A stretch of 64,000 nt of DNA, from positions 186,001 through 250,000 of IMG/VR virus record IMGVR_UViG_3300046692_000091; one strand, 5' to 3'. Below, piece by piece: positions 1,032 through 52,048 of this stretch; the stretch's first letter is position 1; each line of letters opens with the position of its first letter. The notes beneath the pieces were generated by a model. The model was not told the origin of the DNA, did no database searches, and saw nothing but the letters and a program-made list of their open reading frames with translations. Made by a program: the position numbers and the translations under genes.

Positions 1032-1447
1032 ATAACGAAACGTTCTATGTTGTCGAAGTAATTCGCAAAGCCGACAACATGGCGTTTATGTTGTTCGGTA
1101 ATCATTCGAGTGATGCGGATGATAGCTGGTATTTCGATCAGCGACGTATCAGTGATCTGCGTGATTGGGCGCGGTTGGGTTCCATTATCCGTATCGGCGA
1201 CCATATCGACCACAATCAGTGGCTCGTTGATTTTGTTATCCCGCAGATGCGTATGTTGCAAGAGCGTTATCCTCTTAGTGACGACCATCACGGAGAGGGT
1301 GTAAAACATGTTACGCATAAACTTTGTATATACAAGGTCGATATGCGAGCTAGTTTAAATTTACGTTTTAAACCAATGGTGTGTCAGACCTTCCATCTGG
1401 TAGGTGAAGCATTTATTGGCGCAATCAAGCAAGGATATACTACATGA
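1028..1447 (+). CDS. hypothetical protein
   Basis: ATG 1028 overlaps the upstream stop; ORF track 995..1447. Confidence 0.75.
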   Translation: MNNETFYVVEVIRKADNMAFMLFGNHSSDADDSWYFDQRRISDLRDWARLGSIIRIGDHIDHNQWLVDFVIPQMRMLQERYPLSDDHHGEGVKHVTHKLCIYKVDMRASLNLRFKPMVCQTFHLVGEAFIGAIKQGYTT

Positions 1448-1800
1448 GTAACCAAACAATCCAATCGGTAGCAGTTGAAACCAAAACAGACAAACTCGCC
1501 CGTTTGCGGAAAGAGTACATCATCGATCAGTGGCCTACGTTCCTGAAACTTTTCCCTGGGATGTCCGAGTATCGCGGTGAAGGCCCTTTGGAACAAAAGG
1601 CTTTGGAGATGCTGGAGCTGAGCTATACCGCACAAGTATCTATCATCGGTGTGAAAGTACCCGATGAAGATCTACCTGCGCTACAAGCTCGGCCCACCAA
1701 AGACTTCATCAAGCATTTGAAGTCAAGTTACAACCGTTCTAATTTGGCCGATCAATGGCGTCTGGTACGCGATCAGTTCCTGATGGATCTCGAAGAATAA
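1444..1800 (+). CDS. hypothetical protein
   Basis: ATGA-coupled 118-aa ORF ending at a hairpin. Confidence 0.75.
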   Translation: MSNQTIQSVAVETKTDKLARLRKEYIIDQWPTFLKLFPGMSEYRGEGPLEQKALEMLELSYTAQVSIIGVKVPDEDLPALQARPTKDFIKHLKSSYNRSNLADQWRLVRDQFLMDLEE

Positions 1801-1803
1801 GAA

Positions 1804-1830
1804 GAGTCCCTTCGGGGACTCCTTTATTAC
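1804..1830 (+). terminator. hairpin terminator
   Basis: GAGTCCC-TTCG-GGGACTC then CTTTATTAC. Confidence 0.8.
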
Positions 1831-1847
1831 GTTAAGTGGAGTTACAC

Positions 1848-2300
1848 ATGGCAATGTCGAAAGCTGAAATTGCAATGAACGCTAAGTTTCCAACTAGTGG
1901 ACCTAAGTACGTCCCTTGGTATAAAGCACCAAGTAATACTCATGTTCGTACTGACGATATGTTCGATGTTGATCGTCAGGGCAATGGGTTCATTGTAACG
2001 GTATACGAATACCTGAACAAGAAGAAAGAAACCTGTCGTGAAGTGATCCGTGTCAAGCACATGGGTAAGGTTACCATACGTGATCTCGCTACTTGTTATG
2101 GTTGCCACCAAGTGCATAAGCGCGCTATGGAATCACATGACTTTCTTACCGTGTACAATCGCCTGTGTCTGGAAGCACCACTCAGTCGTGTGTATCGCTT
2201 CGATCACAATGGTCTTGCTATTAAGTGTTCTGGTAAAGCCAGTGACTTTGCCGATATGACCGATCTGAGACAAGTCTGGCCGCCGGTGGAATCTGAATGA
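1848..2300 (+). CDS. hypothetical protein
   Basis: ATG 1848 after GGAG; ORF track 1836..2300. Confidence 0.75.
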   Translation: MAMSKAEIAMNAKFPTSGPKYVPWYKAPSNTHVRTDDMFDVDRQGNGFIVTVYEYLNKKKETCREVIRVKHMGKVTIRDLATCYGCHQVHKRAMESHDFLTVYNRLCLEAPLSRVYRFDHNGLAIKCSGKASDFADMTDLRQVWPPVESE

Positions 2301-2710
2301 CATACGAAAGATTTATGACTCAAGTCTATCCCAAGCTTCAGTCGTATTTGCCTGGTGGTGTCAATTACGATTGGCACATGCCTATTCGTACACGGGTGGT
2401 GCTTCTTGAGCAAGCAGCTAAAGAACTTTTGCTTGCCGCTACGGAACTTGGTTGTGACCATGTCGGTCGTCTCAATACCCCACATAAGTACGATAGCTTA
2501 ATCTTTATTGCCCGGTTTGTTAATAAAGGTTGTAATCGTAACGATAAGCATGCTTGGCGTAAGCTCTGTGCAGACTCAGGGTTTGAGGTGCGCAACGAAG
2601 ATTGGTGGGCACCTGTGTTCTGGGGACCAATGAAAGGTTGGGCGGAATTCCGTAAAGCGATACAGGAATACGTTAAGCTTCAACAAAAAATGACTGGTTG
2701 TTATCATTAG
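2297..2710 (+). CDS. hypothetical protein
   Basis: ATGA-coupled 137-aa ORF. Confidence 0.75.
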   Translation: MTYERFMTQVYPKLQSYLPGGVNYDWHMPIRTRVVLLEQAAKELLLAATELGCDHVGRLNTPHKYDSLIFIARFVNKGCNRNDKHAWRKLCADSGFEVRNEDWWAPVFWGPMKGWAEFRKAIQEYVKLQQKMTGCYH

Positions 2711-2741
2711 ATGATCATCAATCCGTCAATAGGTATTACCA

Positions 2742-2948
2742 ATGCTTCAAAGAAAACAAGTCGTTAACCTAGTTAAAGCTGTCGCCGTAAAAGCCCTTAA
2801 AGGTCGGACGCACATTTTGCTGGGTAATGCAGGTGATGAGTTCCGCGTAGTTGCGGAGCATGAGACGATGCCAGGTTATTACTACATGCGTGGTAAGAAT
2901 CCGGAATGTCCGCCAATGTCTCTGCTGCACTTTACTGAAGTTGCATAA
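2742..2948 (+). CDS. hypothetical protein
   Basis: 68-aa ORF followed by a hairpin. Confidence 0.65.
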   Translation: MLQRKQVVNLVKAVAVKALKGRTHILLGNAGDEFRVVAEHETMPGYYYMRGKNPECPPMSLLHFTEVA

Positions 2949-2950
2949 GC

Positions 2951-2978
2951 GCAGCCCTCTGGGGCTGCATTTATTTCG
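2951..2978 (+). terminator. hairpin terminator
   Basis: GCAGCCC-TCTG-GGGCTGC then ATTTATTTCG. Confidence 0.7.
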
Positions 2979-2990
2979 TTAGGAGTTAAC

Positions 2991-3410
2991 ATGCGTTACA
3001 ATAGCCCGTCAAAGCAGAAGTTTACTTTACTCGGTTGGACCATGGGTTGGATCGAATGGCTCATCTTGTTCGGTGTGTTGGCGTACGGAGTTTATGATCA
3101 CTTCGATAAAAAGCCCCCACCACTCACAACTGTTCAAGAAGTCGAATCCGTCTTCTTAGGTAGTGATGATGATAATACAAAGTCTGTTGACGTCTGGTTG
3201 ATGAAATACCAACTGGATTTCGATCGAGCTGATAAGGAATACCAGGATGGCCGGGATCTGCGATTCTTTAAGCATTCCTTTCTGAAGAAGTGTCTTACGG
3301 AAGTGGCGGAGAAGAATGGACCACGTCTATCAGATGCCTGGGTAAGAGAGTGTCTGGAAAAAGCAGACCGTGAAGCATTCGCTGCTCAAGAATACTGGAA
3401 GAAGAAATGA
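2991..3410 (+). CDS. hypothetical membrane-anchored protein
   Basis: SD AGGAG; N-terminal TM segment. Confidence 0.75.
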   Translation: MRYNSPSKQKFTLLGWTMGWIEWLILFGVLAYGVYDHFDKKPPPLTTVQEVESVFLGSDDDNTKSVDVWLMKYQLDFDRADKEYQDGRDLRFFKHSFLKKCLTEVAEKNGPRLSDAWVRECLEKADREAFAAQEYWKKK

Positions 3411-3727
3411 AGAAGCTAAGATGGATACAGCTTGGTATGATCGTAGGCGTGGTATTAATCGCCGCCGGTGTATTTGGCCTTGTGCAGCAAAAGAAAGACA
3501 AGGCCGAGGAGCTCCAAGAATGGATAGCTGAAAATGTCTATCCTGTACTGAAGATTCGTAATCTGCTTACTACCCAATGTACCCTGCAATGGGAACTAGG
3601 TCACTTACGTGAAGTGGGTGGACGTTGGGAACCTGGTGTAGCTCCTGATGATGTCAAAGCCCGTTGTGCAAGCGATGCTGCCAAGGCCGCCCCTCTTCCT
3701 GTTTATACGGACAGCAATAATGAATGA
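3407..3727 (+). CDS. hypothetical membrane-anchored protein
   Basis: ATGA-coupled; N-terminal TM segment. Confidence 0.75.
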   Translation: MKKLRWIQLGMIVGVVLIAAGVFGLVQQKKDKAEELQEWIAENVYPVLKIRNLLTTQCTLQWELGHLREVGGRWEPGVAPDDVKARCASDAAKAAPLPVYTDSNNE

Positions 3728-4001
3728 TAAGGCTACTACTTCTTTCTTCGGCGCTTGCTTTGTCATTGGCTTAGCAGCGTTGAGTGTGGTACTCTGGAAC
3801 AAATACAATCCACCTCAGTTAGACCCAGGTTATCTGGCGTTCCAAGCTGATACGGATAATCGTCTGGCCATTCGTAAGAAGCGTTTGGCCTATGAAGCTG
3901 CATGTATCCACGACGAGCGTCTGTTGGATATTCAATTTGGGAAAGTAGTCTATGACTGTGGTAAGATCTCAAAGCAGGTCTACCCAATGCCAGATGTTTA
4001 A
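3720..4001 (+). CDS. hypothetical membrane-anchored protein
   Basis: ATG 3720 overlaps the upstream gene end; N-terminal TM segment. Confidence 0.7.
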   Translation: MNDKATTSFFGACFVIGLAALSVVLWNKYNPPQLDPGYLAFQADTDNRLAIRKKRLAYEAACIHDERLLDIQFGKVVYDCGKISKQVYPMPDV

Positions 4002-4014
4002 AACCATCTGAAGA

Positions 4015-4023
4015 CTACATTAC
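4015..4023 (+). promoter_or_regulatory. phiKZ-type early promoter-like motif (variant)
   Basis: CTACATTAC, intergenic, 30 nt upstream of an ATG; variant of the CTATATTAC motif repeated in this window. Confidence 0.5.
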
Positions 4024-4052
4024 AATAGTGATAAGAACCTAAGGAGTTGTAA

Positions 4053-4730
4053 ATGGACCAAGTTAAGAGTAACTTTGAAATCGCACGTGGTATCGTTCGT
4101 CGCTACATGGCAAACTTCACTGATTCAACTACTCCACCAAAACTGGTGAAAGGTGGTTTCTTTGCTATGATCGCCTCGGATACTGGGGAGGTCTGGCTTG
4201 GGGAAGCTCAGTCCTTCGCAGCAACTATCACGCGTTTCAGAGCTACTACTGGAAAGCAGATTGCTGATTGCATGGCGCAAGCTAAGCTGCGTGGGGCTAA
4301 GTTAGAACTGTGGCTGTTGACACAACCAACTCGCTTCTCTGCACAGGAGTTGGAAAATGAGCTGTATGAGTGTGACCTGTTGGCTGGACGGAAACGTCCT
4401 AACCGTGAAGGCGCAGGTGAGTTGCTGGTGGTTCGCCATCGTCGCTCGCTGAACTACTTCGTGGTATCCAATCGTCAGGAATCGACGCACGAGTCTGTGC
4501 TATCGCGTTTCCTGTACCGGTTGAATCAAACTGGTGGTGATGTGCACAACAAACGGTTGTCTGATTTCATTACCGAGAACGTTGAGGATGTATTGAATCA
4601 ACGCGGTTTTGATATTACGTTTGTTGCACACTTTGTGGACAATGAAGATCTTTGGTTGAAGCGGCAGGTTTATATCGACGAGTGTCAATCAGGCGAATGC
4701 TTGAACCACCGTAATGTTGACCTGGTTTAA
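4053..4730 (+). CDS. hypothetical protein, possible degenerate GIY-YIG-like fold
   Basis: SD AAGGAG; GGFFAMIASDTGEVWLGE resembles a GIY...GKVYIG pattern; catalytic residues not clear. Confidence 0.5.
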   Translation: MDQVKSNFEIARGIVRRYMANFTDSTTPPKLVKGGFFAMIASDTGEVWLGEAQSFAATITRFRATTGKQIADCMAQAKLRGAKLELWLLTQPTRFSAQELENELYECDLLAGRKRPNREGAGELLVVRHRRSLNYFVVSNRQESTHESVLSRFLYRLNQTGGDVHNKRLSDFITENVEDVLNQRGFDITFVAHFVDNEDLWLKRQVYIDECQSGECLNHRNVDLV

Positions 4731-4806
4731 TTATACTCTCCTTTATTATCTGGTGAGCAAATGCTTCCACAAAAGAAATCCCAAATGTCCAAAAGGTTCA
4801 ATCATC

Positions 4807-5457
4807 ATGAGTGCACACATTGTAGAGATCCATGACCATATCAAAATCCTATTAAAGCGTATTGAAAATTATACGTCAAACCGGCAGTATGGTGAGGGGA
4901 ACATTCCTCACCTGTGCATTAAAGTAAAACACAACAATGGCTTTGCCTGGTTTGGTGTTCACATCCTGGAAGCACCAACCATCAACTGGCCTGTAGAAAT
5001 ACGGGACCAGATTGAGAAAGAAATTCGTGATGGTCTTGATAAGATCTGCGATGTCCAGGAACTGGTTACTGATATGCCTCGTCTGATGGATTCCATCTCT
5101 GACGTGGTAAGTTCACGCAAGCGCCCAACTATCTTTGGTGGGCAAGGCAACGATCTACTGCAACTCCACATGGACGGTAATGTTCAACTCGATATGTATC
5201 GGGATCATCGGAATGGCGATACGCTTTCCTATGGTGGGTTTGAAGGAGAGATTCTGTTGAATGGTCGTTGGTATCCATTCTTCATGTATCACCGTGGGGT
5301 CATCCTGTATAACTACATCGATGCTACTGTAGCTACGGCTATGATCACTCGTGCACTGACTCGTCAGTTCCCTGAGATCTTCGATGAAGACGAACCAGAC
5401 TTCGTACAAGTTGATCACAGTATCGATCGTACTCGGAATAAACGTAAGGAGCTCTGA
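4807..5457 (+). CDS. hypothetical protein
   Basis: Long ORF (track 4714..5457); likely ATG 4807. Confidence 0.75.
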   Translation: MSAHIVEIHDHIKILLKRIENYTSNRQYGEGNIPHLCIKVKHNNGFAWFGVHILEAPTINWPVEIRDQIEKEIRDGLDKICDVQELVTDMPRLMDSISDVVSSRKRPTIFGGQGNDLLQLHMDGNVQLDMYRDHRNGDTLSYGGFEGEILLNGRWYPFFMYHRGVILYNYIDATVATAMITRALTRQFPEIFDEDEPDFVQVDHSIDRTRNKRKEL

Positions 5458-5891
5458 TGTCTCATCTGGTGCTGGTTGAAATCGCACCTGTAGAAACGTC
5501 TCTAGGCTTCTCCCGTTTATCAGGGGAGCCATTGACGTGCCTAGAGTCCTACGCAGACAAGATCACTGATCTATTTACAATTCGTCAATACGGGTATCAC
5601 CCTGAATACGGTGCAACACTCTTTGAGATCATCATCGACTGGGGCGACTCTTATATCAATCCTGGTCCCCTACCTGGGTACCTCGGTGAGATACTAGAAC
5701 CATTGCCGCTCAGGGCAGCTCTTGCTAAACTGCAAAGACAGTATGAGGTAATCTTAGAAGCGAACTGTCAGGTCGTGCGCCACGAGGGCCGGATAACTAG
5801 GTGTTCGTTCAAACCGAAAGGTGAATATCTAGATGCCCCGACCAATTTAGACTGGACGCTCGAAGATCCTCCCAAGCGAGAACTCATTTGA
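5457..5891 (+). CDS. hypothetical protein
   Basis: TGATG-coupled 144-aa ORF with SD AAGGAG. Confidence 0.75.
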   Translation: MSHLVLVEIAPVETSLGFSRLSGEPLTCLESYADKITDLFTIRQYGYHPEYGATLFEIIIDWGDSYINPGPLPGYLGEILEPLPLRAALAKLQRQYEVILEANCQVVRHEGRITRCSFKPKGEYLDAPTNLDWTLEDPPKRELI

Positions 5892-6064
5892 CCGAGAATA
5901 GTGTACAACTATATATGTGGTGATACTGCATGTGTTGTTTCCTTTCTCTTGATCGCTCTTTAACAACTTGTGTGTAACGACTAGCGGGGTTAGATTCCCT
6001 TGCACCTCCTCAGGCGTCTTTCATCGACTGATGCCGTGTCTTGGATTGCCAAGCGCAATAAATT

Positions 6065-6093
6065 GCCTATCCTTCGGGATAGGCTTTATGTTG
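6065..6093 (+). terminator. hairpin terminator-like element
   Basis: GCCTATCC-TTCG-GGATAGGC then TTTATGTTG. Confidence 0.8.
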
Positions 6094-6126
6094 TTTAAGA
6101 CTAACTGACTTAATTGGGGCCACATT

Positions 6127-6582
6127 ATGTATTACAACTTCAGTCACAAAGAACTACCGTTCCAACTGAATACACTGCTGCGCTTTCTCTGCAAGGCTAC
6201 AGTAATGCGTCGTCAGTTTGATGAAGACGAACACGTTTCGTTCACACCTCAAACTTCCGTAACAATGGTTGTGCCGTCACCTGGTAGCTGTGACATCGAA
6301 CCGTATATCATCGCTACTTGTCCAGTAACTGGTTGCAGTCTGCGTTTGACTGTTAAGCTGGTACCTGAGCGCTCACTGGGGACACGTAATGATGCTGTGG
6401 CATACTTACGTCGCACTCTGTGCCGTGAAGCTATCATGGTGTCTGAGCGCGATATCCACAATGTCGAGAAGTATGGTGAGCGTAAGCATTACACCAAGAA
6501 CTTCTTCAAAGAGCTGATCGCGAAATATCAGTATCGCATTGATACCTTCGCATCCTACAACTTCCATGCACGTTACGATTAA
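6127..6582 (+). CDS. hypothetical protein
   Basis: 151-aa ORF. Confidence 0.75.
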   Translation: MYYNFSHKELPFQLNTLLRFLCKATVMRRQFDEDEHVSFTPQTSVTMVVPSPGSCDIEPYIIATCPVTGCSLRLTVKLVPERSLGTRNDAVAYLRRTLCREAIMVSERDIHNVEKYGERKHYTKNFFKELIAKYQYRIDTFASYNFHARYD

Positions 6583-6620
6583 GGCTTTATATGTACGGAC
6601 AATCATTTCAAGGTAACACC

Positions 6621-6842
6621 ATGAGCTTTAAAGCACGACTGAAGTACGAAGCAATAACCATCAGTGTAAGTGTAATCAGTGCACTCTGTTATATGGCCAC
6701 GGTTTTCTGCGTGGTTATGGTGTTTGGTGCAGCTGCTACAAACACGTTGTGGATGGCACCTGTTGCGTTAGCACTGGCTGTTGTCTGTGCGCGTATCGGT
6801 GTTGTTACTCATGGTTATGCTAAACCACGATGGAAACGTTAA
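6621..6842 (+). CDS. small membrane protein (2 TM)
   Basis: Hydrophobic ORF; ATG 6621 after AAGGT (track start 6591). Confidence 0.65.
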   Translation: MSFKARLKYEAITISVSVISALCYMATVFCVVMVFGAAATNTLWMAPVALALAVVCARIGVVTHGYAKPRWKR

Positions 6843-7141
6843 TGGAAATCCCAACAAGGCAAGATCGCATTCAAAGCCTGTATGGTGAGGCTATCGAGAC
6901 GTACTCGGTAGTCTTAAACAAAGCTATCCTGGAGGACAGTGAGGAAACGGATGGTAAGGGTTGTTCTTATATCACTACCCGCTTGAATGCTGACGGAGAT
7001 TATGTGGACTCACGTGTTATCAAATATCTCGATGAGCATTATCGTAAAGCTGGTTGGATCATTGAGCAGCATTCCGATGCAGATAGTGATAAGCAACACA
7101 TCCGTATCTATTTTCTGCAGCAATCCGTTAAGGGTGATTAG
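6842..7141 (+). CDS. hypothetical protein
   Basis: TAATG-coupled ORF. Confidence 0.7.
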   Translation: MEIPTRQDRIQSLYGEAIETYSVVLNKAILEDSEETDGKGCSYITTRLNADGDYVDSRVIKYLDEHYRKAGWIIEQHSDADSDKQHIRIYFLQQSVKGD

Positions 7142-12125: not shown

Positions 12126-13385
12126 TTAACCTTTTACGCAGAGAATTTGTTTGAGAGTATGGACGATGTCCACGAGTTGTTCTTGTGCAGACATTACGTC
12201 TTCGATGTTCTTGTAAGCTTTTGGTGTTTCATCGATGACAGAGATATCCTTACGACATTCTACACCAGCTGTATCACGGACATGATCTTCCAGGGTGAAT
12301 GTCTTAGCAGCCTGAGTACGGGACATGACTCGGCCAGCTCCGTGTGAACACGAGCAGAAAGAATCACGGTTACCTTTACCACGGACGATGAAAGACTTAG
12401 CGCCCATCGAACCAGGGATAATCCCGAGTGTACCTTTATCTGCGTTCACTGCACCCTTACGAGTTACCAGAACGTTGTTACCGAAGTGGCGTTCTTCTGA
12501 TACGTAGTTGTGGTGGCAGTTGATGGCCGACATATCGGAATCGATTGGCAGACCTAGAGTACGGTGGATAGCACCAAGAGTAGCATGCATCATGATCGAA
12601 CGGTTAAGTGCAGCGAAGCGTTGTGCCCAGGACACGGCTTCGATGTAGTCGTTGTAATATTGCGAACCTTCGGGGAGGTAAGCGAGATCACCATCTGGCA
12701 GATGAATGAAGAAACGTTTCATTTCTTCTTTTGCTTTCGAGATAAAGTAAGTACCGATTGCGTTACCGATACCACGAGAACCAGAGTGCAGCATCACCCA
12801 CACTTGATCGGATTCATCCAGACAGATCTCGATGAAGTGGTTACCTGTACCGAGAGTACCTACATGGTTCCATGCACGAGCTGCAGCTTTCGCCAACTTA
12901 GGATGACGTTCTACAATACGTTCCAGATGCTTACGCAGTTTCTCTGCTTCATCACGGATAGCTTGAGATTGGTGAGTGAACACGGATACCGTACCAAATG
13001 CACCACGATCGTTCTTCCCACCGTTGTCAGTACGGCCATGAGGCACTGAGGCTTCGATAGCGGCACGCAAATGGCCAAGAGAGGTCGGTAGTGCTGTGGA
13101 CTTAAAAGTAAGGCGCTGCGCAGCCATACCACAACCGATATCAACACCTACTGCGGCTGGAATGATTGCGCCTTTAGTAGCAACCACAGAACCCACTGTT
13201 GCACCTTTACCCAAGTGTACGTCGGGCATCACAGCAATGTGCGAATAGATGAATGGGAGGGCAGCAATGTTCTTGAGTTGAGAAATTGCTTCTTTCTCTA
13301 CTGGTACGCCAACGGTCCAGCCTTTGATTGGTTTAGAACCTGGTTCTACTGTATCACCAATCAGTTCAAATGTTTTCTGTTTCAT
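12126..13385 (-). CDS. rtcB: RtcB family 3'-phosphate RNA ligase
   Basis: Motifs MPDVHLGKGATVGSV, VGVDIGCG, GTLGTGNHFIE, MLHSGSRG, CHHNY, IPGSMG, SCSHGAGR, DETPKAYK. Confidence 0.97.
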   Translation of the reverse strand: MKQKTFELIGDTVEPGSKPIKGWTVGVPVEKEAISQLKNIAALPFIYSHIAVMPDVHLGKGATVGSVVATKGAIIPAAVGVDIGCGMAAQRLTFKSTALPTSLGHLRAAIEASVPHGRTDNGGKNDRGAFGTVSVFTHQSQAIRDEAEKLRKHLERIVERHPKLAKAAARAWNHVGTLGTGNHFIEICLDESDQVWVMLHSGSRGIGNAIGTYFISKAKEEMKRFFIHLPDGDLAYLPEGSQYYNDYIEAVSWAQRFAALNRSIMMHATLGAIHRTLGLPIDSDMSAINCHHNYVSEERHFGNNVLVTRKGAVNADKGTLGIIPGSMGAKSFIVRGKGNRDSFCSCSHGAGRVMSRTQAAKTFTLEDHVRDTAGVECRKDISVIDETPKAYKNIEDVMSAQEQLVDIVHTLKQILCVKG

Positions 13386-13449
13386 ATAAAGCCTCACGCG
13401 GATGGAAAGAGGAATTGTTACATACACTGACTTTGCCAGTATTATTAAA

Positions 13450-13477
13450 CGGCATAAGGGTTCCCCGGAGGGAACCC
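13450..13477 (-). terminator. hairpin terminator-like element
   Basis: Minus strand GGGTTCCC-TCCG-GGGAACCC-TTATGCCG. Confidence 0.75.
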
Positions 13478-14245: not shown

Positions 14246-15130
14246 TTATTTCAGGAAAGTACCACAACTTGCTTGTACATCAGTACCAACGCGAGGAATT
14301 AGTTTTACACGTGCATTGGGTAATCGGCGTTTGATGTAACGATGTAAGTAATCGATATGGCCTTCTACTGGTTCACGAGAGTAATGCCCTTCTGGTGGAT
14401 TGTACCGAACGATGTTCCAATTAACCTCTAACTGATATCCATCGATCACATCCAGGATAGCTTTAACATCAGCAAGGTTATCATTTTCATGTTCAATGAA
14501 AGCGTAGTGGATCTTCGGAACTTTGCCTGTGTGCAGCTGCCAGTCTTTGAGGATTGCGAATGCATCTCGTGGGTAACCCGCTTTAGGTAACCAACGTTTA
14601 CGAAACCGATCATTCAATGAGTAGACCGAATAATAAATCTCGGGGTATACCTCTGGATCAGTGAACACCGATTCAAGTGACCGGCGACTAAACTCTTCTG
14701 GCATGATAGTAGATATCAGGAACTTTGATTCAAGTCCATATCTGGCTGCACGTTTCTTTAAGCCACGCAAGATCTCATCGGCATTACTTAGAAAGATCTT
14801 ATTAGCTAAAGGTTCGCCTCGTGCCATGAAGTTGAAATGGACCATCTTAGCTGGATGCTTGTCGGCATAGTATCGTAGGACTTCATCTGCTTGCTGCCAG
14901 AATTCTTCAATCGTGGTATCACGTAGTTTATTCTGACCTGTTGCAGTTAACCAGCACATCCGGCAAGCTTGCTTACAACCTGTCTGAGACGACAAGTAAA
15001 CAATGAAGTAGTCATCAACCCGACGTACATATCGTGCCTCTAGCATCCCTGGGTGATCTTCAAAGCGGTGTTCGAAGTTTACTGATTGATCGAGTTGGGA
15101 TACATGTTGTTTAAAGATTAGATTATCCAT
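14246..15130 (-). CDS. RlmN/Cfr-like radical SAM protein
   Basis: SSQTGCKQACRMC (CxxxCxxC), FMARGEPLAN (MGMGEP-like), C-terminal ASCG. Confidence 0.85.
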   Translation of the reverse strand: MDNLIFKQHVSQLDQSVNFEHRFEDHPGMLEARYVRRVDDYFIVYLSSQTGCKQACRMCWLTATGQNKLRDTTIEEFWQQADEVLRYYADKHPAKMVHFNFMARGEPLANKIFLSNADEILRGLKKRAARYGLESKFLISTIMPEEFSRRSLESVFTDPEVYPEIYYSVYSLNDRFRKRWLPKAGYPRDAFAILKDWQLHTGKVPKIHYAFIEHENDNLADVKAILDVIDGYQLEVNWNIVRYNPPEGHYSREPVEGHIDYLHRYIKRRLPNARVKLIPRVGTDVQASCGTFLK

Positions 15131-15897: not shown

Positions 15898-16629
15898 TTA
15901 GACTACGCTGGGGGTGTAATTATTGGTGTAACGCACGTAGTTACTAATTCTTACATTACCTAGGTAACGAGGAACGTTATTAGCGTTGCTGTTTAGAGCA
16001 CCTAGGTATAACGTAGACAAGTTAGCGAAGTTACTAGCTGGTCCACTCTGGAAGAAACCAGATAATGTTCCACCTGAAACTCCAGGCTGCATGTCTTGTA
16101 GTACGCCGTTAATATAGAATCTTAGGCGGCGATTAGTATCGCAGGTCATTGCGTATTTAGTGACTATATTCGTAAAGGTGTTGAAGGTAACTGCCGGGTA
16201 ACGACACTCTGACTTCGCTCCACTGTTGCTGTTATCAGAGAACATCAATAGATTACCATAACCGGCATCACCAAAGCGCATGGTGAAACCTTTGAGTAAT
16301 GACGAATCTGTCATATAGAATTCGTTTGTCCAAGCCGTAGCATTACCTGGGCGAAGTTCTGACCACTCGATTGTCCAATTGGTACTAGACAAATCCAAGA
16401 GTGGGTTGAAAGCCATGAATAAACGCGAACCACTACCACCAGCTGTAGGCATAGATAGGGTTGGTTTATTATCAATTAGTGTTGTGTTACTCACCACTGC
16501 GCCAGCGGATATTGTGATGGGTCTATTACTAACAGTCTCGGTCACTGTGGCCATGTCAATATACAGGATCACATCACCTGTTTCTGGCGGGACCGAGCTC
16601 GAACTTGGTGATAGTAGTAATTCATACAT
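15898..16629 (-). CDS. LamG/concanavalin A-like lectin-fold protein, probably virion-associated
   Basis: LDLSSTNWTIEW and GNVRISNYVRYTNNYTP signatures; paralog of 18676..19395. Confidence 0.7.
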   Translation of the reverse strand: MYELLLSPSSSSVPPETGDVILYIDMATVTETVSNRPITISAGAVVSNTTLIDNKPTLSMPTAGGSGSRLFMAFNPLLDLSSTNWTIEWSELRPGNATAWTNEFYMTDSSLLKGFTMRFGDAGYGNLLMFSDNSNSGAKSECRYPAVTFNTFTNIVTKYAMTCDTNRRLRFYINGVLQDMQPGVSGGTLSGFFQSGPASNFANLSTLYLGALNSNANNVPRYLGNVRISNYVRYTNNYTPSVV

Positions 16630-17668: not shown

Positions 17669-18343
17669 TTATTCGTGCGTAGTAGACAGCTCAGAGATAA
17701 TGCAGATCGAACCATCTTCAACCGGAGTGGTATCGGAGTAATCAACCTGATTGTAAACACCACCATGGAACTGGAAGGTTTCATATTTCCACGAACTATC
17801 TAGCTTCAGCACTGGGCAGACTGACTTACGACCTTGGCAAAGCACTGACGCCGATACGGAACCAGCAGCTGTGACATGTAAGCTAATCTTGAATGGTACA
17901 CCCAATGGAACGTCTTCTATTAGTGTAAAGTTGTTTATTAGTGCGTCATCGAAGTTAGCTCGGAAACCAGCTGTGATCTTCCCTTTATTCCAGAAGACTT
18001 TCAGTGGCGGAGTTGTAGCATCTTTGACATGGACTTGTGCAATTACCACTTTCTTAGCCGAGTTGACTTTAGTAACAGTCATCTCTTGGCGAGACCAGTG
18101 ATGTGCTGCGCTAGTAAGAGACCAATAAGCTGGTTCTTTCCATTCACAGCGTGTGCGATGTGTACTTTTGCTGGACGCCCCTAATGTGGGCGCAGAGAGT
18201 TGAATAGAACCGTCTTCCAATTGACTGACCACTTCTGGACATCTTACCAAGGCTTCCGAACCGAGGAGCTCCAATGCAACCGGATTCTCATCAGAGACCG
18301 GTAATGGAGTAGCAATCAAATAGTTACTGATATCAACGAACAT
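17669..18343 (-). CDS. polysaccharide lyase family 7 (alginate lyase-like)
   Basis: RTRCEWKE (RxExR-like), IAQVH (QIH-like) and FHGGVYNQ (YFKAGxYxQ-like) in the PL7 order. Confidence 0.85.
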   Translation of the reverse strand: MFVDISNYLIATPLPVSDENPVALELLGSEALVRCPEVVSQLEDGSIQLSAPTLGASSKSTHRTRCEWKEPAYWSLTSAAHHWSRQEMTVTKVNSAKKVVIAQVHVKDATTPPLKVFWNKGKITAGFRANFDDALINNFTLIEDVPLGVPFKISLHVTAAGSVSASVLCQGRKSVCPVLKLDSSWKYETFQFHGGVYNQVDYSDTTPVEDGSICIISELSTTHE

Positions 18344-18444: not shown

Positions 18445-18528
18445 GAAAGGGAACAGGAATCGAACCTGCGTTTCCGGCTTGGTACTTATGGTGGCCACCG
18501 GTGTCCTAGGCCGCTAGACGACCCCTCT
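18445..18528 (-). ncRNA. tRNA-like RNA (Glu-type body) with 18-nt anticodon loop
   Basis: AGAGGGG-TC-GTCT-AGCGGCCT-AGGAC-A-CCGGT-[18 nt]-GCCGG-AAAC-GCAGG-TTCGATT-CCTGT-TCCCTTT-C; no CCA. Confidence 0.7.
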
Positions 18529-18675: not shown

Positions 18676-19395
18676 TTACAACTCTAGTGGGCCAGGAGTA
18701 TAGTTACGTGTATATCTAGCGAAGTTACTAAGTCGAACTCTACCGTGATGCCCAGGAACAGCACGTACCGAACTACCGTTCGAATCACCAAATATAAGCG
18801 AGGTGATATTGATCAGTGCTGTTGGTGTAATCGTTTGCATAATGTAGGTTCCATTAGCTGCACCCTTAGCCAATGGGAGTCTCTGTCCATTACGGTAAAT
18901 AAAGATCTGACCATTCTTACATACAAATGCCCATCTACTCAAATTACTAACTAAGGCAGCTTTAGTGAATTGGGTATTATAACAATCGGCTGGTGCAGAG
19001 GCTGTGTTATCCCCCAAATGGAGTCTGTCTAAGAAACCAGAGTCACCATACCTGAAGAATAGTCCACGGCCAGCTGTTGAACTAGTCATTGAAAATTCAA
19101 GGGCATAGGCAGTAGGGGCGGTGTCGTTTATAGATGACCATTCTAATGTCCAGTTTATTGCACTTAAGTTGAGAGGGGCTGCAAATGTCATCACCTGTTT
19201 AGCTGCAACCGTTGGGTATTGCATACTGCCTTGCCCATCGATTAAATACCCAGCGTCAGCTATTGCTCCACCGGTATTGTTGGTGACGGTACCTAACCCA
19301 GATAGATCGGTGGCGGTAACTGGATCATACAAGAATAACACATCCCCTGTGTCCTCCACTGGTAAACTACCCCCAGCTAATAATGCCTCATACAT
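18676..19395 (-). CDS. LamG/concanavalin A-like lectin-fold protein, probably virion-associated
   Basis: LNLSAINWTLEW and GRVRLSNFARYTRNYTP; paralog of 15898..16629. Confidence 0.7.
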   Translation of the reverse strand: MYEALLAGGSLPVEDTGDVLFLYDPVTATDLSGLGTVTNNTGGAIADAGYLIDGQGSMQYPTVAAKQVMTFAAPLNLSAINWTLEWSSINDTAPTAYALEFSMTSSTAGRGLFFRYGDSGFLDRLHLGDNTASAPADCYNTQFTKAALVSNLSRWAFVCKNGQIFIYRNGQRLPLAKGAANGTYIMQTITPTALINITSLIFGDSNGSSVRAVPGHHGRVRLSNFARYTRNYTPGPLEL

Positions 19396-19434
19396 GACGG
19401 TGTGTCCTTTGGTTTATCAATTCAAACTATTGGG

Positions 19435-19460
19435 CGACATAAGAGTAGCCGAAGCTACTC
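19435..19460 (-). terminator. hairpin terminator-like element
   Basis: Minus strand GAGTAGC-TTCG-GCTACTC-TTATGTCG. Confidence 0.75.
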
Positions 19461-19653
19461 ATCCATAAAGAGTTCCCCAGTTAACAACTTTATTCAGTTG
19501 TTCTTGAGTAGGGATTTTATCTCTGACTCGTTGCTCGCATTCTTTATCGAATTGTTCCATTCTGATACGTGCTTCTTTGAGCCTTTCTTTTTGTTCATCT
19601 GTCAGTGGTTCTAATGCGTTACGTGAGAGTGCTATTAAAGTAGCCAGGCTCAT
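19459..19653 (-). CDS. microprotein paralog 5 (64 aa)
   Basis: ATGA-coupled; MSLATLI...PTQEQLNKVV. Confidence 0.75.
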   Translation of the reverse strand: MSLATLIALSRNALEPLTDEQKERLKEARIRMEQFDKECEQRVRDKIPTQEQLNKVVNWGTLYG

Positions 19654-19832
19654 ATCGTGATCAGCCTATTCAAGAGTTCTTGTGAAGGAGCCGTACGCGC
19701 GTGGCGCTCGTCAATCTCTTTGTTATATCCCCGCATTCTTTCATAGAACGCTATATTCCTTTTCTCACGCTCTTCGGCAGATATTGGTTCAGCTCTTTTA
19801 TTAGCCAGATCTATTAAAGCTTTCAGGCTCAT
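19650..19832 (-). CDS. microprotein paralog 4 (60 aa)
   Basis: ATGA-coupled; MSLKALI...PSQELLNRLITI. Confidence 0.75.
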   Translation of the reverse strand: MSLKALIDLANKRAEPISAEEREKRNIAFYERMRGYNKEIDERHARTAPSQELLNRLITI

Positions 19833-19996
19833 AATGAGATTACTCTGTTTAAGAGTTCTTCTGTAACTACTGAGGCTTTCCATTCCTTGGATAACCGGAT
19901 GTTAGTCTGTCTCATTCTTTCTTGGGCAACGGAAAGGCTTTCTTCATGTGTACCATTGCGCGTACGAGCATCTTCGATGAGTTGTTCAAGTGTCAT
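19829..19996 (-). CDS. microprotein paralog 3 (55 aa; not in ORF track)
   Basis: MTLEQLIEDARTRNGTHEESLSVAQERMRQTNIRLSKEWKASVVTEELLNRVISL; ATGA-coupled on both sides. Confidence 0.75.
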   Translation of the reverse strand: MTLEQLIEDARTRNGTHEESLSVAQERMRQTNIRLSKEWKASVVTEELLNRVISL

Positions 19997-20160
19997 AACG
20001 TACATCTCTTAGCTAAAAGTTCAGGGGTAACTTTCTGCTTCTCGAAGTCTTCAGCACACCGCTTATTAAAAGCAGCCGAACGTTTAGCATGGGCTGCCAT
20101 GCGTTCTTCTTTAGTGCCCATGCTATCTCTTACAGCTTTACACAGTGCCTCTAGACTCAT
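19993..20160 (-). CDS. microprotein paralog 2 (55 aa; not in ORF track)
   Basis: MSLEALCKAVRDSMGTKEERMAAHAKRSAAFNKRCAEDFEKQKVTPELLAKRCTL; ATGA-coupled. Confidence 0.75.
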   Translation of the reverse strand: MSLEALCKAVRDSMGTKEERMAAHAKRSAAFNKRCAEDFEKQKVTPELLAKRCTL

Positions 20161-20342
20161 AACGTACACCTTTTGTTCAAGATCTCAGGAGTCATTTGTT
20201 GATTTTTCAACTGTTGCTCCAGCCTCTGGTCCAGTTCAGACATATATTTCTTTTGATACTCTTGAAACTCTACCTGTGTCATACCCATAGCCGATGCAAT
20301 CCGATCTGCCATTCGTTCAATTAATCCCGGTGTCATTGCCAT
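20157..20342 (-). CDS. microprotein paralog 1 (61 aa)
   Basis: Ends MTPEILNKRCTL; TAATG-coupled to the upstream gene. Confidence 0.75.
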   Translation of the reverse strand: MAMTPGLIERMADRIASAMGMTQVEFQEYQKKYMSELDQRLEQQLKNQQMTPEILNKRCTL

Positions 20343-20605
20343 TAATCCACCTGTATCTGTACATAGACTCTTGTCACACCATGCACGAAGTCATAGTTGC
20401 TTACGTACTGTGCTTCATTCAAAGGCTTAGCACTGATCCATACTTGGATGATATCCTGTCCACACTTACGTAGGATCTTAGATACACGGTTCTGGATACG
20501 TCTACGACCTACTGCAGATATCTTAGGGAACTCACGCTTTAACATGAGTACCATGCGTTCATGGCATTCTTTGCCACGCTGTACTTCTGATGGGGTTCTA
20601 TGCAT
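20342..20605 (-). CDS. small basic hypothetical protein
   Basis: Likely ATG 20605 (TAATG overlap); track ORF 20342..20650. Confidence 0.65.
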   Translation of the reverse strand: MHRTPSEVQRGKECHERMVLMLKREFPKISAVGRRRIQNRVSKILRKCGQDIIQVWISAKPLNEAQYVSNYDFVHGVTRVYVQIQVD

Positions 20606-20859
20606 TAGTGCATCACCATTGAACCTTCGAGATGGCAAGCGCAACGACACAGTTGTGTTTCTGTATCGCCATCAACCACAATCAACAGACTAGGATAGAA
20701 TTGACGTTTAGCAAAAACTAGCTTACCCCATTCTGATTCTGTATCATCTCGTTCAATAGCTACAGCCGTTTCACTAAAGTTCTTTTTTAGGAAAGCTTCA
20801 CTCAGTGTGTGATCTTTATTGAGGTATTGACGTTCACTTCTTGCGCAACAAGGTACCAT
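20605..20859 (-). CDS. hypothetical protein
   Basis: SD AGAGGA; ATG 20859. Confidence 0.6.
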   Translation of the reverse strand: MVPCCARSERQYLNKDHTLSEAFLKKNFSETAVAIERDDTESEWGKLVFAKRQFYPSLLIVVDGDTETQLCRCACHLEGSMVMH

Positions 20860-20883: not shown

Positions 20884-20916
20884 CAGCATAAAGGAGATCC
20901 GAAGATCTCCTTTATT
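20884..20916 (-). terminator. hairpin terminator after tRNA operon
   Basis: AAAGGAGATC-CGAA-GATCTCCTTT on + strand; minus strand reads TTCG loop then TTTATGCTG. Confidence 0.8.
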
Positions 20917-20920
20917 GAAT

Positions 20921-20996
20921 TGGCTCCGAGACTAGGATTCGAACCTAGGACCAACGCATTAACAGTGCGCGGCTCTACCAACTGAGCTATCTCGAA
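20921..20996 (-). tRNA. tRNA-Asn(GTT)
   Basis: GCGCA-CTGTTAA-TGCGT; G73; CCA. Confidence 0.93.
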
Positions 20997-20997
20997 A

Positions 20998-21074
20998 TGG
21001 CTCCATGACCTGGACTCGAACCAGGGACACCTTGATTAACAGTCAAGTGCTACTACCAACTGAGCTATCATGGA
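20998..21074 (-). tRNA. tRNA-Asn(GTT)
   Basis: CTTGA-CTGTTAA-TCAAG; G73; CCA. Confidence 0.93.
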
Positions 21075-21231
21075 ATGTACTGGGATGCCGGGCTTTACCG
21101 GATGATCGTTTTATCTAGACTCCCTCTCATGTCTAGCGATGCTTGTATCCCCAAGGATAGCCTAGGCTTGCAGCGAGCTAACGGTTACCCGTTTGGTGCA
21201 AGAGCTGATCTAGTCTACCGATGGAAATTCT

Positions 21232-21315
21232 TTATCTATCAGCGGGTCTTGAAGCCGCACACGGTCGATGGTATTTAGCCAACGATTGTCCTACCGATTG
21301 GACGATGATAGATAA
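21232..21315 (-). ncRNA. degenerate tRNA-like RNA with extended anticodon arm
   Basis: TTATCTATCA/TGATAGATAA closing stem; D-arm GTCC-AATCGGTA-GGAC; 7-bp arm TCGTTGG/CCATCGA; T-like arm GCGG-CTTCAAGAC-CCGC. Confidence 0.55.
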
Positions 21316-21439
21316 TGAAACGTTTACCTAGACAGTTCCCTAATAACTGATTACCCTGCGCGTCAGGTCGTTCGTTTATTAGGTAGGCGTGTATGCGACG
21401 CCTCGTTTTAGTTCTGCTCCTAAGAGCCTTCTGTCTAGC

Positions 21440-21519
21440 ACGCCCCTACCGGATTTGAACCGATGACCGATCAACGTATGGTTACCGTCGATTGCTCTAC
21501 CTAGCTGAGCTAAGGGGCG
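21440..21519 (-). ncRNA. tRNA-like RNA (Ile2/Met-type body) with 7-bp anticodon stem and 9-nt loop
   Basis: CGCCCCT-TA-GCTC-AGCTAGGTA-GAGC-A-ATCGACG-GTAACCATA-CGTTGAT-CGGTC-ATCGG-TTCAAAT-CCGGT-AGGGGCG-T; no CCA. Confidence 0.75.
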
Positions 21520-21523
21520 ACAA

Positions 21524-21608
21524 TGGTGGGTGCAGAAGGATTCGAACCTTCGAAGTCAGCGACGGGAGATTTACAATCTCCTGGGTTTGGCCACTCCCCA
21601 ACACACCC
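21524..21608 (-). tRNA. tRNA-Tyr(GTA)
   Basis: GGAGA-TTGTAAA-TCTCC; long variable arm; CCA. Confidence 0.93.
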
Positions 21609-21853
21609 GTATCAGCAGCAGCCGGTCCACCCGGTCATGAGGTTTTAACTCTTCTGTGCTGATAGTAAAACATTTGAAATTAGCTATGGAGAAAGGCGAC
21701 TCGTTTTATCTCCTGACTTGTACCCATGCACCCATTATTGATCCACTGGGCGACTCCTTTAGTGTGGATCGGGCTGTACCTTACCGTCGTTGTAAGCTAA
21801 TTTCAAAACTAACGAGGCAGTAGAAGTCCGAAGGACCAATACCACCTCTAAGA

Positions 21854-21930
21854 TGGCGCAACCAGCGGGACTCGAACCCGCGACCTCTTGCGTGACAGGC
21901 AAGCATTCTAACCAACTGAACTATGGCTGC
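21854..21930 (-). tRNA. tRNA-Asp(GTC)
   Basis: CTTGC-CTGTCAC-GCAAG; G73; CCA. Confidence 0.95.
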
Positions 21931-21933
21931 AAT

Positions 21934-22026
21934 AAACTAGTCGCGCTTTAACCCGCGTAAGCTAATAGCCCTGTTATGGCGGGCCGTCCAAATCAAGGGA
22001 GTTGAACCCGAGTTCTCGACTAGTTT
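21934..22026 (-). ncRNA. four-way-junction RNA with T-like and D-like arms in permuted order
   Basis: 10-bp closing stem AAACTAGTCG/CGACTAGTTT; arms GGG-TTCAACT-CCC, GCCC-9nt-GGGC, CGC-GGGTTAAA-GCG. Confidence 0.55.
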
Positions 22027-22033
22027 AAAAAAA

Positions 22034-22111
22034 TGGGGTGAGCTACGGGTCTCGAACCCGTGACCTCCAGGGTCACATCCTGGCACTCTAACCAACTGAG
22101 CTAAGCCCAAC
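22034..22111 (-). tRNA. tRNA-His(GTG)
   Basis: CCAGG-ATGTGAC-CCTGG; G-1:C73; CCA; atypical A32 and U1.C72. Confidence 0.85.
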
Positions 22112-27449: not shown

Positions 27450-27487
27450 CAACATAAGGCTTCCCCGAAGGGAAGCCAATATGCCGT
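27450..27487 (-). terminator. hairpin terminator-like element after nrdB
   Basis: CAACATAA-GGCTTCCC-CGAA-GGGAAGCC-AATATGCCG on + strand. Confidence 0.8.
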
Positions 27488-33575: not shown

Positions 33576-33582
33576 CTATTTA

Positions 33583-33611
33583 GCCTACCTTTCGGGGTAG
33601 GCTTTATGTCG
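33583..33611 (+). terminator. hairpin terminator-like element
   Basis: GCCTACCT-TTCG-GGGTAGGC-TTTATGTCG. Confidence 0.8.
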
Positions 33612-52041: not shown

Positions 52042-52048
52042 CATATTA

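What the first reader, a model, noticed from the sequence alone, without database searches (positions are those of the whole stretch)
19459..20342. Five tandem, ATGA-coupled, diverged microprotein paralogs (two missed by the ORF track)
Seen: 61, 55, 55, 60 and 64 aa. Four start MS/TLxxL. All end with a shared motif: MTPEILNKRCTL, VTPELLAKRCTL, VTEELLNRVISL, PSQELLNRLITI, PTQEQLNKVVNW. The charged helical middles are divergent. The array sits just downstream of the Q-tRNA operon. Inference: a diversifying array of inhibitors or binders with a constant docking motif, as in anti-defence gene expansions.
Basis: partly seen in the sequence, partly recalled or inferred. Interest (0 to 1): 0.6.

Follow-up and report, generated by a model that had tools for sequence, protein, structure and literature searches.

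The report
Tandem jumbo-phage microprotein gene family
Five neighbouring, overlapping genes in a giant Pseudomonas phage encode old, individually conserved copies of one small three-helix protein family, which phage phiKZ carries as a single copy and whose function is still unknown.

Summary
Five minus-strand ORFs of 61, 55, 55, 60 and 64 aa fill 19459-20342, and every junction is ATGA. They are true paralogs: a profile built from any four recovers the fifth among 5,273 ORFs of the genome at E 1e-6 to 2e-9. All five match PHROG 20797, a family of unknown function. The window comes from a 315-kb phage from a rhizosphere metagenome, related to Pseudomonas phage Psa21.

The family is small: about 106 clusters among 1.84 billion representative proteins. 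Every GenBank phage hit is a Pseudomonas phage. Copy number is 1 in phiKZ (gp295.1), PS119XW and pf16, and 3-6 in Psa21-like phages.

The copies are ancient and under purifying selection (dN/dS 0.07-0.26 against orthologs), so they are not diversifying. The conserved C-terminal motif lies on helix 3 of a predicted three-helix fold, and in copies A-D its codons also carry the next gene's ribosome-binding site and start codon.

Two phiKZ-type terminators bound a seven-gene operon that follows the queuosine-type tRNA genes. The phiKZ homolog was detected by mass spectrometry but is almost silent in the first 10 minutes of infection.

An accessory, host-directed binder role is plausible but unproven. 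The anti-defence reading is untested.

The parts
20921..22110 (-). Upstream tRNA cluster: His-GTG, Asp-GTC, Tyr-GTA, Thr-GGT and two Asn-GTT genes. This includes all four queuosine-type GUN tRNAs.
   Evidence: ARAGORN; Rfam tRNA model
20889..20914 (-). phiKZ-type terminator: an 11-bp stem with a TTCG loop, followed by the tail TTATGCTGT. It sits directly after the second tRNA-Asn and marks the 5' limit of the operon. The ATG inside its tail is the spurious 94-aa start of the first gene.
   Evidence: Sequence; hairpin scan; motif as published for phiKZ (PMC10914365)
20605..20859 (-). p84, a Cys-rich 84-aa protein (starts MVPCC, carries a CxCxCH motif) and the first gene of the operon. It is the ortholog of PSA21_412.
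   Evidence: No Pfam, PHROG, NCBIfam or PADLOC hit
20342..20605 (-). p87, an 87-aa protein starting at the ATG in a TAATG overlap with p84. AlphaFold predicts an alpha-alpha-beta-beta-beta arrangement. In one relative it is fused in frame to a family member.
   Evidence: Fusion protein P0084 in L015/L016
20157..20342 (-). Copy A, 61 aa, ends KRCTL. Its start overlaps the p87 stop (TAATG).
19993..20160 (-). Copy B, 55 aa, ends KRCTL. ATGA overlap with A.
19829..19996 (-). Copy C, 55 aa, ends RVISL. ATGA overlap with B.
19650..19832 (-). Copy D, 60 aa, ends RLITI. ATGA overlap with C.
19459..19653 (-). Copy E, 64 aa, ends NWGTLYG. ATGA overlap with D. This is the subtype that stands last in most arrays examined, and it is the subtype of the single copy in phiKZ (gp295.1).
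19434..19460 (-). phiKZ-type terminator: a 7-bp stem with a TTCG loop, then the tail TTATGTCGC. It overlaps the stop codon of E and marks the 3' limit of the operon.
18676..19395 (-). Next gene downstream: a LamG/concanavalin-like protein of 239 aa, itself a multi-copy family in relatives. It is context, not part of the array.

Best explanation
Shown. The five genes encode paralogs of one small, soluble, three-helix protein family (PHROG 20797; phiKZ gp295.1). They sit in a seven-gene, translationally coupled operon (p84, p87, A-E) that is bounded by two phiKZ-type terminators. The operon lies in the tRNA and RNA-repair accessory region of a Psa21-like jumbo phage from the rhizosphere. The duplications are old and every copy is kept under purifying selection.

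Inferred. The proteins are accessory, host-directed binders. Helices 1 and 3, together with a conserved Arg and Asn/Asp on helix 2, make a constant scaffold. The variable charged face of the long helix 2 gives each subtype its own partner, probably a Pseudomonas component or a variant of one. Phages of plant-associated pseudomonads carry 3-6 subtypes to cover more targets or hosts, while phiKZ needs only one. By analogy with phiKZ they act in the middle or late phase of infection, not at entry.

The confidence given applies to the inferred mechanism. The descriptive part is near certain.
For: Real genes and real paralogs:
- Leave-one-out HMMs recover each copy at E 1e-6 to 2e-9.
- All five hit phrog_20797.
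- dN/dS against orthologs is 0.07-0.26.
- The phiKZ homolog PHIKZ_p88 was identified by SEC-DIA-MS, with one SEC peak (Fossati 2023, PMC10449902, Fig. 1F source data).

Fold:
- AlphaFold2 with 59 sequences gives helices at residues 3-13, 19-46 and 50-63, mean pLDDT 86.
- Conservation is concentrated in helices 1 and 3 plus Arg, Phe and Asn/Asp in helix 2.

Accessory and tied to the host genus:
- Every GenBank phage hit is a Pseudomonas phage (48/48 and 42/42).
- These include the unrelated 158-kb phage pf16, where the gene sits beside a helicase gene and no tRNA genes are annotated in the 6-kb stretch examined.
- Only about 106 clusters match among 1.84 billion representatives, nearly all stand-alone proteins of 54-67 aa.
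- Copy number and subtype content vary among close relatives: 6, 6, 5, 5, 5, 4, 4, 3 and 1.
- The locus lies among tRNA genes, homing endonucleases, an alginate lyase and RtcB.

Operon limits: terminators of the published phiKZ type flank it.

Timing: phiKZ gp295.1 reads are 0.4-5.6, against 1,000-7,000 for early genes, at 2-10 min after infection (Gerovac 2024, PMC10914614, Fig. 3b source data).
Against: - No partner is known.
- No fold, family or PDB match gives a function.
- The monomer model has a low pTM (0.45).
- There are no RNA or protein data for this phage itself.
- Purifying selection and old paralogs fit a conserved phage-internal role just as well.
- The host-genus restriction may partly reflect which phages have been sequenced.
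- One member lies on 0.8-1.06 Mb contigs of unknown nature.
- The phiKZ timing may not transfer to this phage.
Confidence: 0.4

Rival explanations
1. The proteins are subunits or assembly factors of a phage-internal complex. The copies, perhaps with p87 and p84, would form homo- or hetero-oligomeric helical bundles that serve a middle or late phage process such as virion assembly, chaperoning the neighbouring LamG-like proteins, or RNA handling. They would not target the host.
For: - ATGA coupling throughout the operon is conserved in relatives, which favours fixed-ratio co-expression.
- A natural in-frame fusion of p87 with a member exists in two assemblies.
- All copies are under purifying selection.
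- The phiKZ homolog is not early.
- LamG-like 'virion structural protein' paralogs flank the arrays.
Against: - phiKZ, PS119XW and pf16 work with a single copy, and no p87 was found in the stretches examined.
- In Psa21 the p87 homolog lies 5 kb from the array.
- Subtype content varies among close relatives.
- gp295.1 is not annotated as a virion protein in the phiKZ record.
- The family also occurs in a phage of a different lineage (pf16), which is unusual for a structural part.
Confidence: 0.2
2. The proteins counter tRNA-targeting defence. They would inhibit anticodon nucleases or other tRNA-directed toxins, working alongside the replacement queuosine-type tRNAs encoded just upstream and the RtcB ligase encoded downstream.
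For: - In phiKZ, PS119XW, Psa21, D6, Viktualia, L013, L014 and L015 the genes lie within or just after the tRNA cluster.
- The upstream tRNAs here include the complete GUN set. From general knowledge, this is the target set of colicin E5-type nucleases.
- RtcB is encoded on the same strand.
Against: - The link to tRNA genes may be plain inherited synteny.
- The pf16 locus has no tRNA annotated, and ARAGORN finds none in L010.
- There is no similarity to any known inhibitor.
- The phiKZ homolog is not early.
- No test was done here.
Confidence: 0.08
3. The proteins are small nucleic-acid-binding regulators, helix-turn-helix-like or coiled-coil, that tune phage transcription or translation.
For: - The Atlas shape search places the model near the IS3-type transposase N-terminal HTH plus zipper (TM 0.62-0.63 over 60 residues).
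- The family's median pI is 9.0.
Against: - A TM score at this length means little, by the tool's own note.
- Three of the five copies here are acidic or neutral.
- No HTH family hit reaches significance.
- The 28-residue middle helix is not a classical HTH.
Confidence: 0.08
4. The genes encode precursor peptides of a ribosomally made, modified peptide (RiPP) that is matured by the radical SAM enzyme downstream.
For: - The genes are tandem short ORFs with a shared C-terminal Cys-Thr/Ser motif.
- A radical SAM gene lies at 14249-15130 on the same strand.
- In Psa21 the p87 homolog sits beside that enzyme.
Against: - The Cys is present in only 78 of 151 members.
- Selection acts on the whole length, and a confident helical fold is predicted.
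- The enzyme is 4.3 kb away, with tRNA genes and other genes in between.
- In the stretches examined, no radical SAM gene is annotated beside the single-copy homologs of phiKZ, PS119XW and pf16.
Confidence: 0.03
5. This is not a real feature: the ORFs are chance frames or untranslated.
For: There are no expression data for this phage.
Against: - Profile homology is significant.
- dN/dS is well below 1 in the called frames.
- The family is conserved across many phages.
- The phiKZ homolog was seen by mass spectrometry.
Confidence: 0.02

Closest known systems
PHROG 20797 / phiKZ gp295.1 (PHIKZ_p88, YP_009639947.1)
   Same: Same family by profile match. The size (54-64 aa), N-terminal MSLxxL and C-terminal motif agree, and the gene also lies in the tRNA cluster. 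Copy E is of the phiKZ subtype.
   Different: phiKZ and its close relatives carry one copy. This phage carries five distinct subtypes in an ATGA-coupled array, together with p84 and p87. The family has no known function, and I found no paper that discusses it.
Arrays in Psa21-like Pseudomonas phages (Psa21, D6, RVTF4, Viktualia)
   Same: The arrays are syntenic, lying between the tRNA-Asn genes and the LamG-like genes, and share overlapping starts and subtypes.
   Different: Subtype content differs: subtype X (starts MT..P.CW.IMGY) is present in Psa21, D6, Viktualia, L013 and L014 but absent here. Copy number ranges from 4 to 6 in these phages. The GenBank records leave one copy unannotated in Psa21 and one in D6.
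Clusters of small anti-defence genes in phages, such as anti-CRISPR loci (compared from general knowledge)
   Same: Small soluble proteins in a variable accessory region, with copy and content turnover among close relatives and a distribution that follows the host genus.
   Different: Anti-CRISPR loci usually hold unrelated proteins, not paralogs, and are usually expressed early. Here all the proteins belong to one family, are under purifying selection, and the phiKZ homolog is not early. No inhibition has been shown.
T4-type internal protein (ip) genes (compared from general knowledge)
   Same: A variable set of small paralog-like genes that share a short constant terminal motif on otherwise different bodies.
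   Different: The T4 motif is an N-terminal capsid-targeting sequence that the prohead protease removes. Here the constant part is C-terminal and is predicted to be a helix of the fold. There is no evidence of packaging or cleavage.

Membership tests
PHROG 20797 (uncharacterised phage microprotein family that includes phiKZ gp295.1) | Significant match to the family profile over most of its 54 positions | tested here: met
   A 6e-6, B 5e-4, C 9e-5 and E 1.5e-5. D alone is weak (0.12), but the leave-one-out profile recovers D at 2e-8 and the wider family profile at 5e-19.
PHROG 20797 (uncharacterised phage microprotein family that includes phiKZ gp295.1) | Stand-alone protein of about 54-67 aa ending in T/S-x-E-x-L-N/A-K/R-x-[C/I/V]-x-[L/I], with or without the extension W-G-x-x-x-G | tested here: met
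   The alignment of 151 members has an invariant Leu and near-invariant Glu, Thr/Ser and Lys/Arg. The C-terminal tripeptides were tallied. All five copies fit.
Diversifying (positively selected) gene array | dN/dS near or above 1 between orthologs, or recent duplicates that diverge fast | tested here: not met
   dN/dS is 0.07-0.26 where dS is unsaturated. Paralogs share 14-33% amino-acid identity and low DNA identity. This is a whole-gene average; site-wise tests were not run.
Phage anti-defence protein | Shown inhibition of, or binding to, a defence system component | not testable with these tools
   This needs expression against panels of defence systems or pull-downs.
Phage anti-defence protein | Expression at the very start of infection (usual, not obligatory) | tested here: not met
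   Tested only for the phiKZ homolog, from published data: 0.4-5.6 normalised reads at 2-10 min, against thousands for early genes. Nothing is known for this phage.
RiPP precursor peptides | The residue to be modified is conserved in the core peptide, and a maturase gene is adjacent | tested here: not met
   Cys is present in 52% of members. The radical SAM gene is 4.3 kb away, behind tRNA genes. The single-copy homologs have no such gene annotated in the stretches examined.
Translationally coupled operon | Overlapping stop and start codons on one strand, between shared transcription signals | tested here: met
   Two TAATG and four ATGA junctions. phiKZ-type terminators stand at both ends. Coupling itself was not measured.

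The most novel reading that the evidence does not exclude
The microproteins are a set of inhibitors of tRNA-directed nucleases. Together with the replacement queuosine-type tRNAs encoded just upstream and the RtcB ligase encoded downstream, they would form a three-layer 'block, replace, repair' module. The subtype repertoire (1 copy in phiKZ, 3-6 in phages of plant pseudomonads) would track the range of nucleases met in the hosts.
Probability: 0.07. Interest if true: 0.75.

Novelty: new member of a known kind. Interest (0 to 1): 0.35.

Why it matters
Jumbo phages of the phiKZ group carry hundreds of genes of unknown function. This family is short, conserved, apparently restricted to Pseudomonas phages and made as protein in phiKZ, yet it has never been studied. 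Its copy number runs from one in phiKZ to 3-6 subtypes in phages of plant-associated pseudomonads. That gives a natural series for asking what the copies add, whether host range, protection from a defence, or a dosage need. Cultured phages are available for the work (phiKZ, Psa21, D6, Viktualia). If the proteins prove to be host-directed binders, they are small enough to serve as tools or leads against Pseudomonas targets. If they are phage-internal, they add a part to the phiKZ-type infection cycle. As it stands, this is an ordinary though tidy case of a phage microprotein family, and its function remains open.

Tried and rejected
Family scans. Pfam, NCBIfam and PADLOC gave nothing significant for the five copies, p84 or p87. 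Weak hits such as TIGR02574 (E 0.09) and SspC (E 0.004) lie far below their cut-offs and were set aside.

Structure of copy E. Foldseek against the PDB and BFVD found no match at E <= 0.001. VIA-align against 48,161 chains gave only generic coiled coils (Z < 5, rmsd about 10 Å). The profile found nothing in PDB sequences at E <= 10. The ESM Atlas feature and structure searches gave no usable hit. The Atlas shape search gave TM 0.6 to HTH transposase N-termini and to chorismate mutase, which is not decisive at this length.

Homodimer. The complex-prediction job on two copies of E returned no verdict. I do not use it either way.

p87. Only 8 close homologs were found. The AlphaFold2 model is moderate (pLDDT 79; the other four models 54-64). 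Foldseek against the PDB gave only weak resemblance to dynein light chains (TM about 0.35, E > 0.3), so p87 gave no functional lead.

Expression. Two public runs hold any of this DNA (one fully, rhizosphere; one a 0.09 share, root) and neither is RNA.

Wider searches.
- The search for related loci with the five-copy alignment failed because it has no conserved 7-10-column stretch.
- A scan of 185,579 species genomes with P0048 found no close relative.
- megablast against GenBank phages found nothing, and blastn found only a 77-bp match to Psa21.

Literature. No paper names PHIKZ295.1, PHIKZ_p88 or phrog_20797 in its text. The supplements of the phiKZ ONT-cappable-seq paper are not held.

Readings considered and rejected. 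RiPP precursors and chance ORFs (see the rival explanations). A PDZ-type or degron-type reading of the free C-terminus, because the proteins are predicted to be cytoplasmic and helical and nothing supports it. A prohead-protease site at T/S-x-E, because there is no evidence that the proteins are packaged.

Full report
**What is there**

The window is bases 186001-250000 of a 314,814-bp virus record that CheckV estimates to be complete. The DNA is held by a rhizosphere metagenome run. The window encodes a terminase, a tail sheath, ribonucleotide reductase and virion proteins of a jumbo myophage. Its nearest GenBank relative is Pseudomonas phage Psa21 (Tepukevirus, 305 kb). The PL7 alginate lyase is 75% identical at the amino-acid level, but the DNA is too diverged for megablast.

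Five ORFs lie head to tail on the minus strand:

| Copy | Coordinates (with stop) | Length |
|---|---|---|
| A | 20157-20342 | 61 aa |
| B | 19993-20160 | 55 aa |
| C | 19829-19996 | 55 aa |
| D | 19650-19832 | 60 aa |
| E | 19459-19653 | 64 aa |

Every junction is ATGA. B and C appear as 58-aa ORFs from upstream starts, so they would be lost at a 60-aa cut-off.

**More than chance**

For each copy I built an HMM from the other four and searched all 5,273 stop-to-stop ORFs of the genome. The left-out copy was always the best non-training hit (E 1.3e-6 to 2.1e-9), and the next ORF had E of 0.05 or worse. All five also match PHROG 20797, a 54-position family of unknown function. The genome holds no further copy.

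**The operon**

Two more small genes precede A with one-base TAATG overlaps:
- p84 (20605-20859) is Cys-rich and is the ortholog of PSA21_412.
- p87 (20342-20605).

The seven genes lie between two hairpins with TTCG loops followed by TTATGYYGT, at 20914-20889 and 19460-19443. Nine such elements occur in the window. The pattern matches the conserved intrinsic terminator motif published for phiKZ (PMC10914365).

Upstream on the same strand are tRNA-His(GTG), Asp(GTC), Tyr(GTA), Thr(GGT) and two Asn(GTT) genes. Downstream on the same strand follow:
- a LamG-like protein;
- tRNA genes, including one that ARAGORN missed (18445-18528);
- the PL7 lyase;
- a second LamG-like protein;
- a radical SAM enzyme;
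- RtcB.

**Relatives and copy number**

A word-seeded search found 60 proteins of 55-65 aa, almost none with a meaningful name. An exhaustive profile search of 1.84 billion representatives found only 106 clusters at E <= 1e-3, nearly all stand-alone proteins of 54-67 aa. Every GenBank phage hit is a Pseudomonas phage (48/48 and 42/42 records).

| Copies | Phage or contig |
|---|---|
| 6 | Viktualia; contig L013 |
| 5 | this phage; D6; contig L014 |
| 4 | Psa21; RVTF4 |
| 3 | contig L015 |
| 1 | phiKZ and its genus (gp295.1 = PHIKZ_p88); PS119XW; the 158-kb phage pf16 |

Counts come from the family HMM.

In the phiKZ-related phages the genes lie in or just after the tRNA cluster. In pf16 the gene sits beside a helicase gene and no tRNA gene is annotated in the stretch examined.

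Subtypes can be told apart: A, X, B, C, C', D and E. E is the phiKZ subtype and stands last in most arrays examined. Subtype X is present in Psa21, D6, Viktualia, L013 and L014 but absent here.

**Selection**

Codon alignments against orthologs in L013, L014 and D6 give dN/dS of 0.07-0.26 wherever dS is not saturated. Examples are B (dN 0.052, dS 0.47), C (0.106, 1.20) and D (0.19, 1.76). Paralogs within the array share 14-33% amino-acid identity and little DNA identity. The copies are therefore old, translated and individually conserved. The array changes by gain and loss of subtypes, not by rapid sequence diversification.

**Fold and the C-terminal motif**

AlphaFold2 with 59 homologs predicts three helices for copy E, at residues 3-13, 19-46 and 50-63. 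Mean pLDDT is 86 and pTM is 0.45.

In an alignment of 151 members the most conserved columns are:
- a Leu in helix 1;
- Arg, Phe/Leu/Tyr and Asn/Asp in helix 2;
- the run T/S-x-E-x-L-N-K-x-[C/I/V]-x-[L/I] in helix 3.

I read T-P-E as a helix N-cap. In A-D the last codons also carry the Shine-Dalgarno sequence and the ATGA start of the next gene. The motif is equally conserved in E-type and single-copy members, so the overlap cannot be the only constraint. The motif is thus at least a fold element. Whether it also docks on a partner is open.

No structural or sequence match gives a function. Family pI values are mixed.

**Evidence from phiKZ**

No paper discusses gp295.1, but two data sets include it.
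- In the SEC-DIA-MS source data of Fossati et al. 2023 (PMC10449902, Fig. 1F), PHIKZ_p88 is listed with one SEC peak. It was therefore detected as protein.
- In the RNA-seq time course of Gerovac et al. 2024 (PMC10914614, Fig. 3b source data), its values at 2-10 min are 0.9-5.6, against 1,000-7,000 for early genes. It is not an early gene.
- Middle-type promoters are reported for neighbouring genes of the phiKZ tRNA region (PMC8244752).

**Partners in the operon**

A 143-aa protein (P0084) is an in-frame fusion of a p87 homolog with a family member. It is present in two assemblies. This hints at a shared function. However, in Psa21 the p87 homolog lies 5 kb from the array, and phiKZ shows none in the stretch examined. 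The p87 model (alpha-alpha-beta-beta-beta, pLDDT 79) found no convincing structural neighbour.

**Interpretation**

The firm result is descriptive: a conserved, translated microprotein family that has expanded into a coupled array.

For mechanism I favour accessory, host-directed binders built on a constant three-helix scaffold with subtype-specific surfaces (confidence about 0.4). Three observations support this:
- the family follows the host genus across unrelated phage lineages;
- it sits in a variable accessory region;
- its subtype content varies among close relatives.

A phage-internal complex or assembly role is the main rival (0.2). The more specific idea that the proteins block tRNA-directed nucleases, beside the Q-type tRNAs and RtcB, is attractive but rests only on gene position (about 0.08). 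RiPP precursors and chance ORFs are unlikely.

**Limits**

- There are no expression data for this phage.
- Timing is taken from phiKZ.
- dN/dS values are whole-gene pairwise estimates.
- The structure is predicted.

Noticed in passing
window 18445-18528 (-): The Rfam tRNA model matches here at 36.1 bits (gathering score 29), directly upstream of tRNA-Trp. ARAGORN did not report it. Psa21 has a tRNA-Ser at the equivalent place.
   Followed up: partly
window 13458-13477, 19443-19460, 20889-20914, 27458-27477, 33582-33603, 48195-48216, 52048-52069, 59316-59337: A recurrent terminator-like element: a perfect GC-rich hairpin, mostly with a TTCG loop, followed by TTATGYYGT. This is the motif published for phiKZ intrinsic terminators and supports kinship with phiKZ-type transcription.
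   Followed up: partly
window 18676-19395 and 15898-16629 (-): Two LamG/concanavalin-like paralogs (phrog_3545, Laminin_G_3) are interleaved with tRNA genes. Phage D6 has three in tandem and RVTF4 has two after its array. This is a second multi-copy family in the same region.
   Followed up: partly
window 17669-18343 (-): A PL7 alginate lyase gene (Pfam E 6.5e-39) lies inside the tRNA cluster and is 75% identical to that of Psa21. It is probably a depolymerase aimed at Pseudomonas alginate.
   Followed up: no
window 12126-13427 and 14246-15130 (-): An RtcB RNA ligase and a radical SAM enzyme (annotated as RlmN-like in Psa21) lie downstream on the same strand. Together with the tRNA genes they make up an RNA supply and repair region.
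   Followed up: no
L001 5161-5334 (Psa21) and L008 2610-2837 (D6): Each GenBank record leaves one family copy unannotated, so published copy counts for these phages are one too low.
   Followed up: yes
L015 4001-4432 and L016 3012-3443: A natural in-frame fusion of the p87 family with a microprotein family member (143 aa, P0084) is present in an NCBI assembly and in a Logan assembly.
   Followed up: partly
L010 6001-6174 (JGI contigs of 0.8-1.06 Mb), also L011 and L012: A single family member (P0048) sits between two short DUF262/GmrSD_N-like genes on very long metagenomic contigs. Local GC is 49.5% and there are no tRNA genes nearby. The nature of these contigs (bacterium, island or very large phage) is unknown, and no close relative occurs in 185,579 species genomes.
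   Followed up: partly
window 20889 versus 20859 and 20650 versus 20605 (-): The longest-ORF starts of p84 (94 aa) and p87 (102 aa, GTG) are probably wrong. The p84 ATG at 20889 lies in the terminator tail. Orthologs and the TAATG overlap point to the 84-aa and 87-aa forms.
   Followed up: yes
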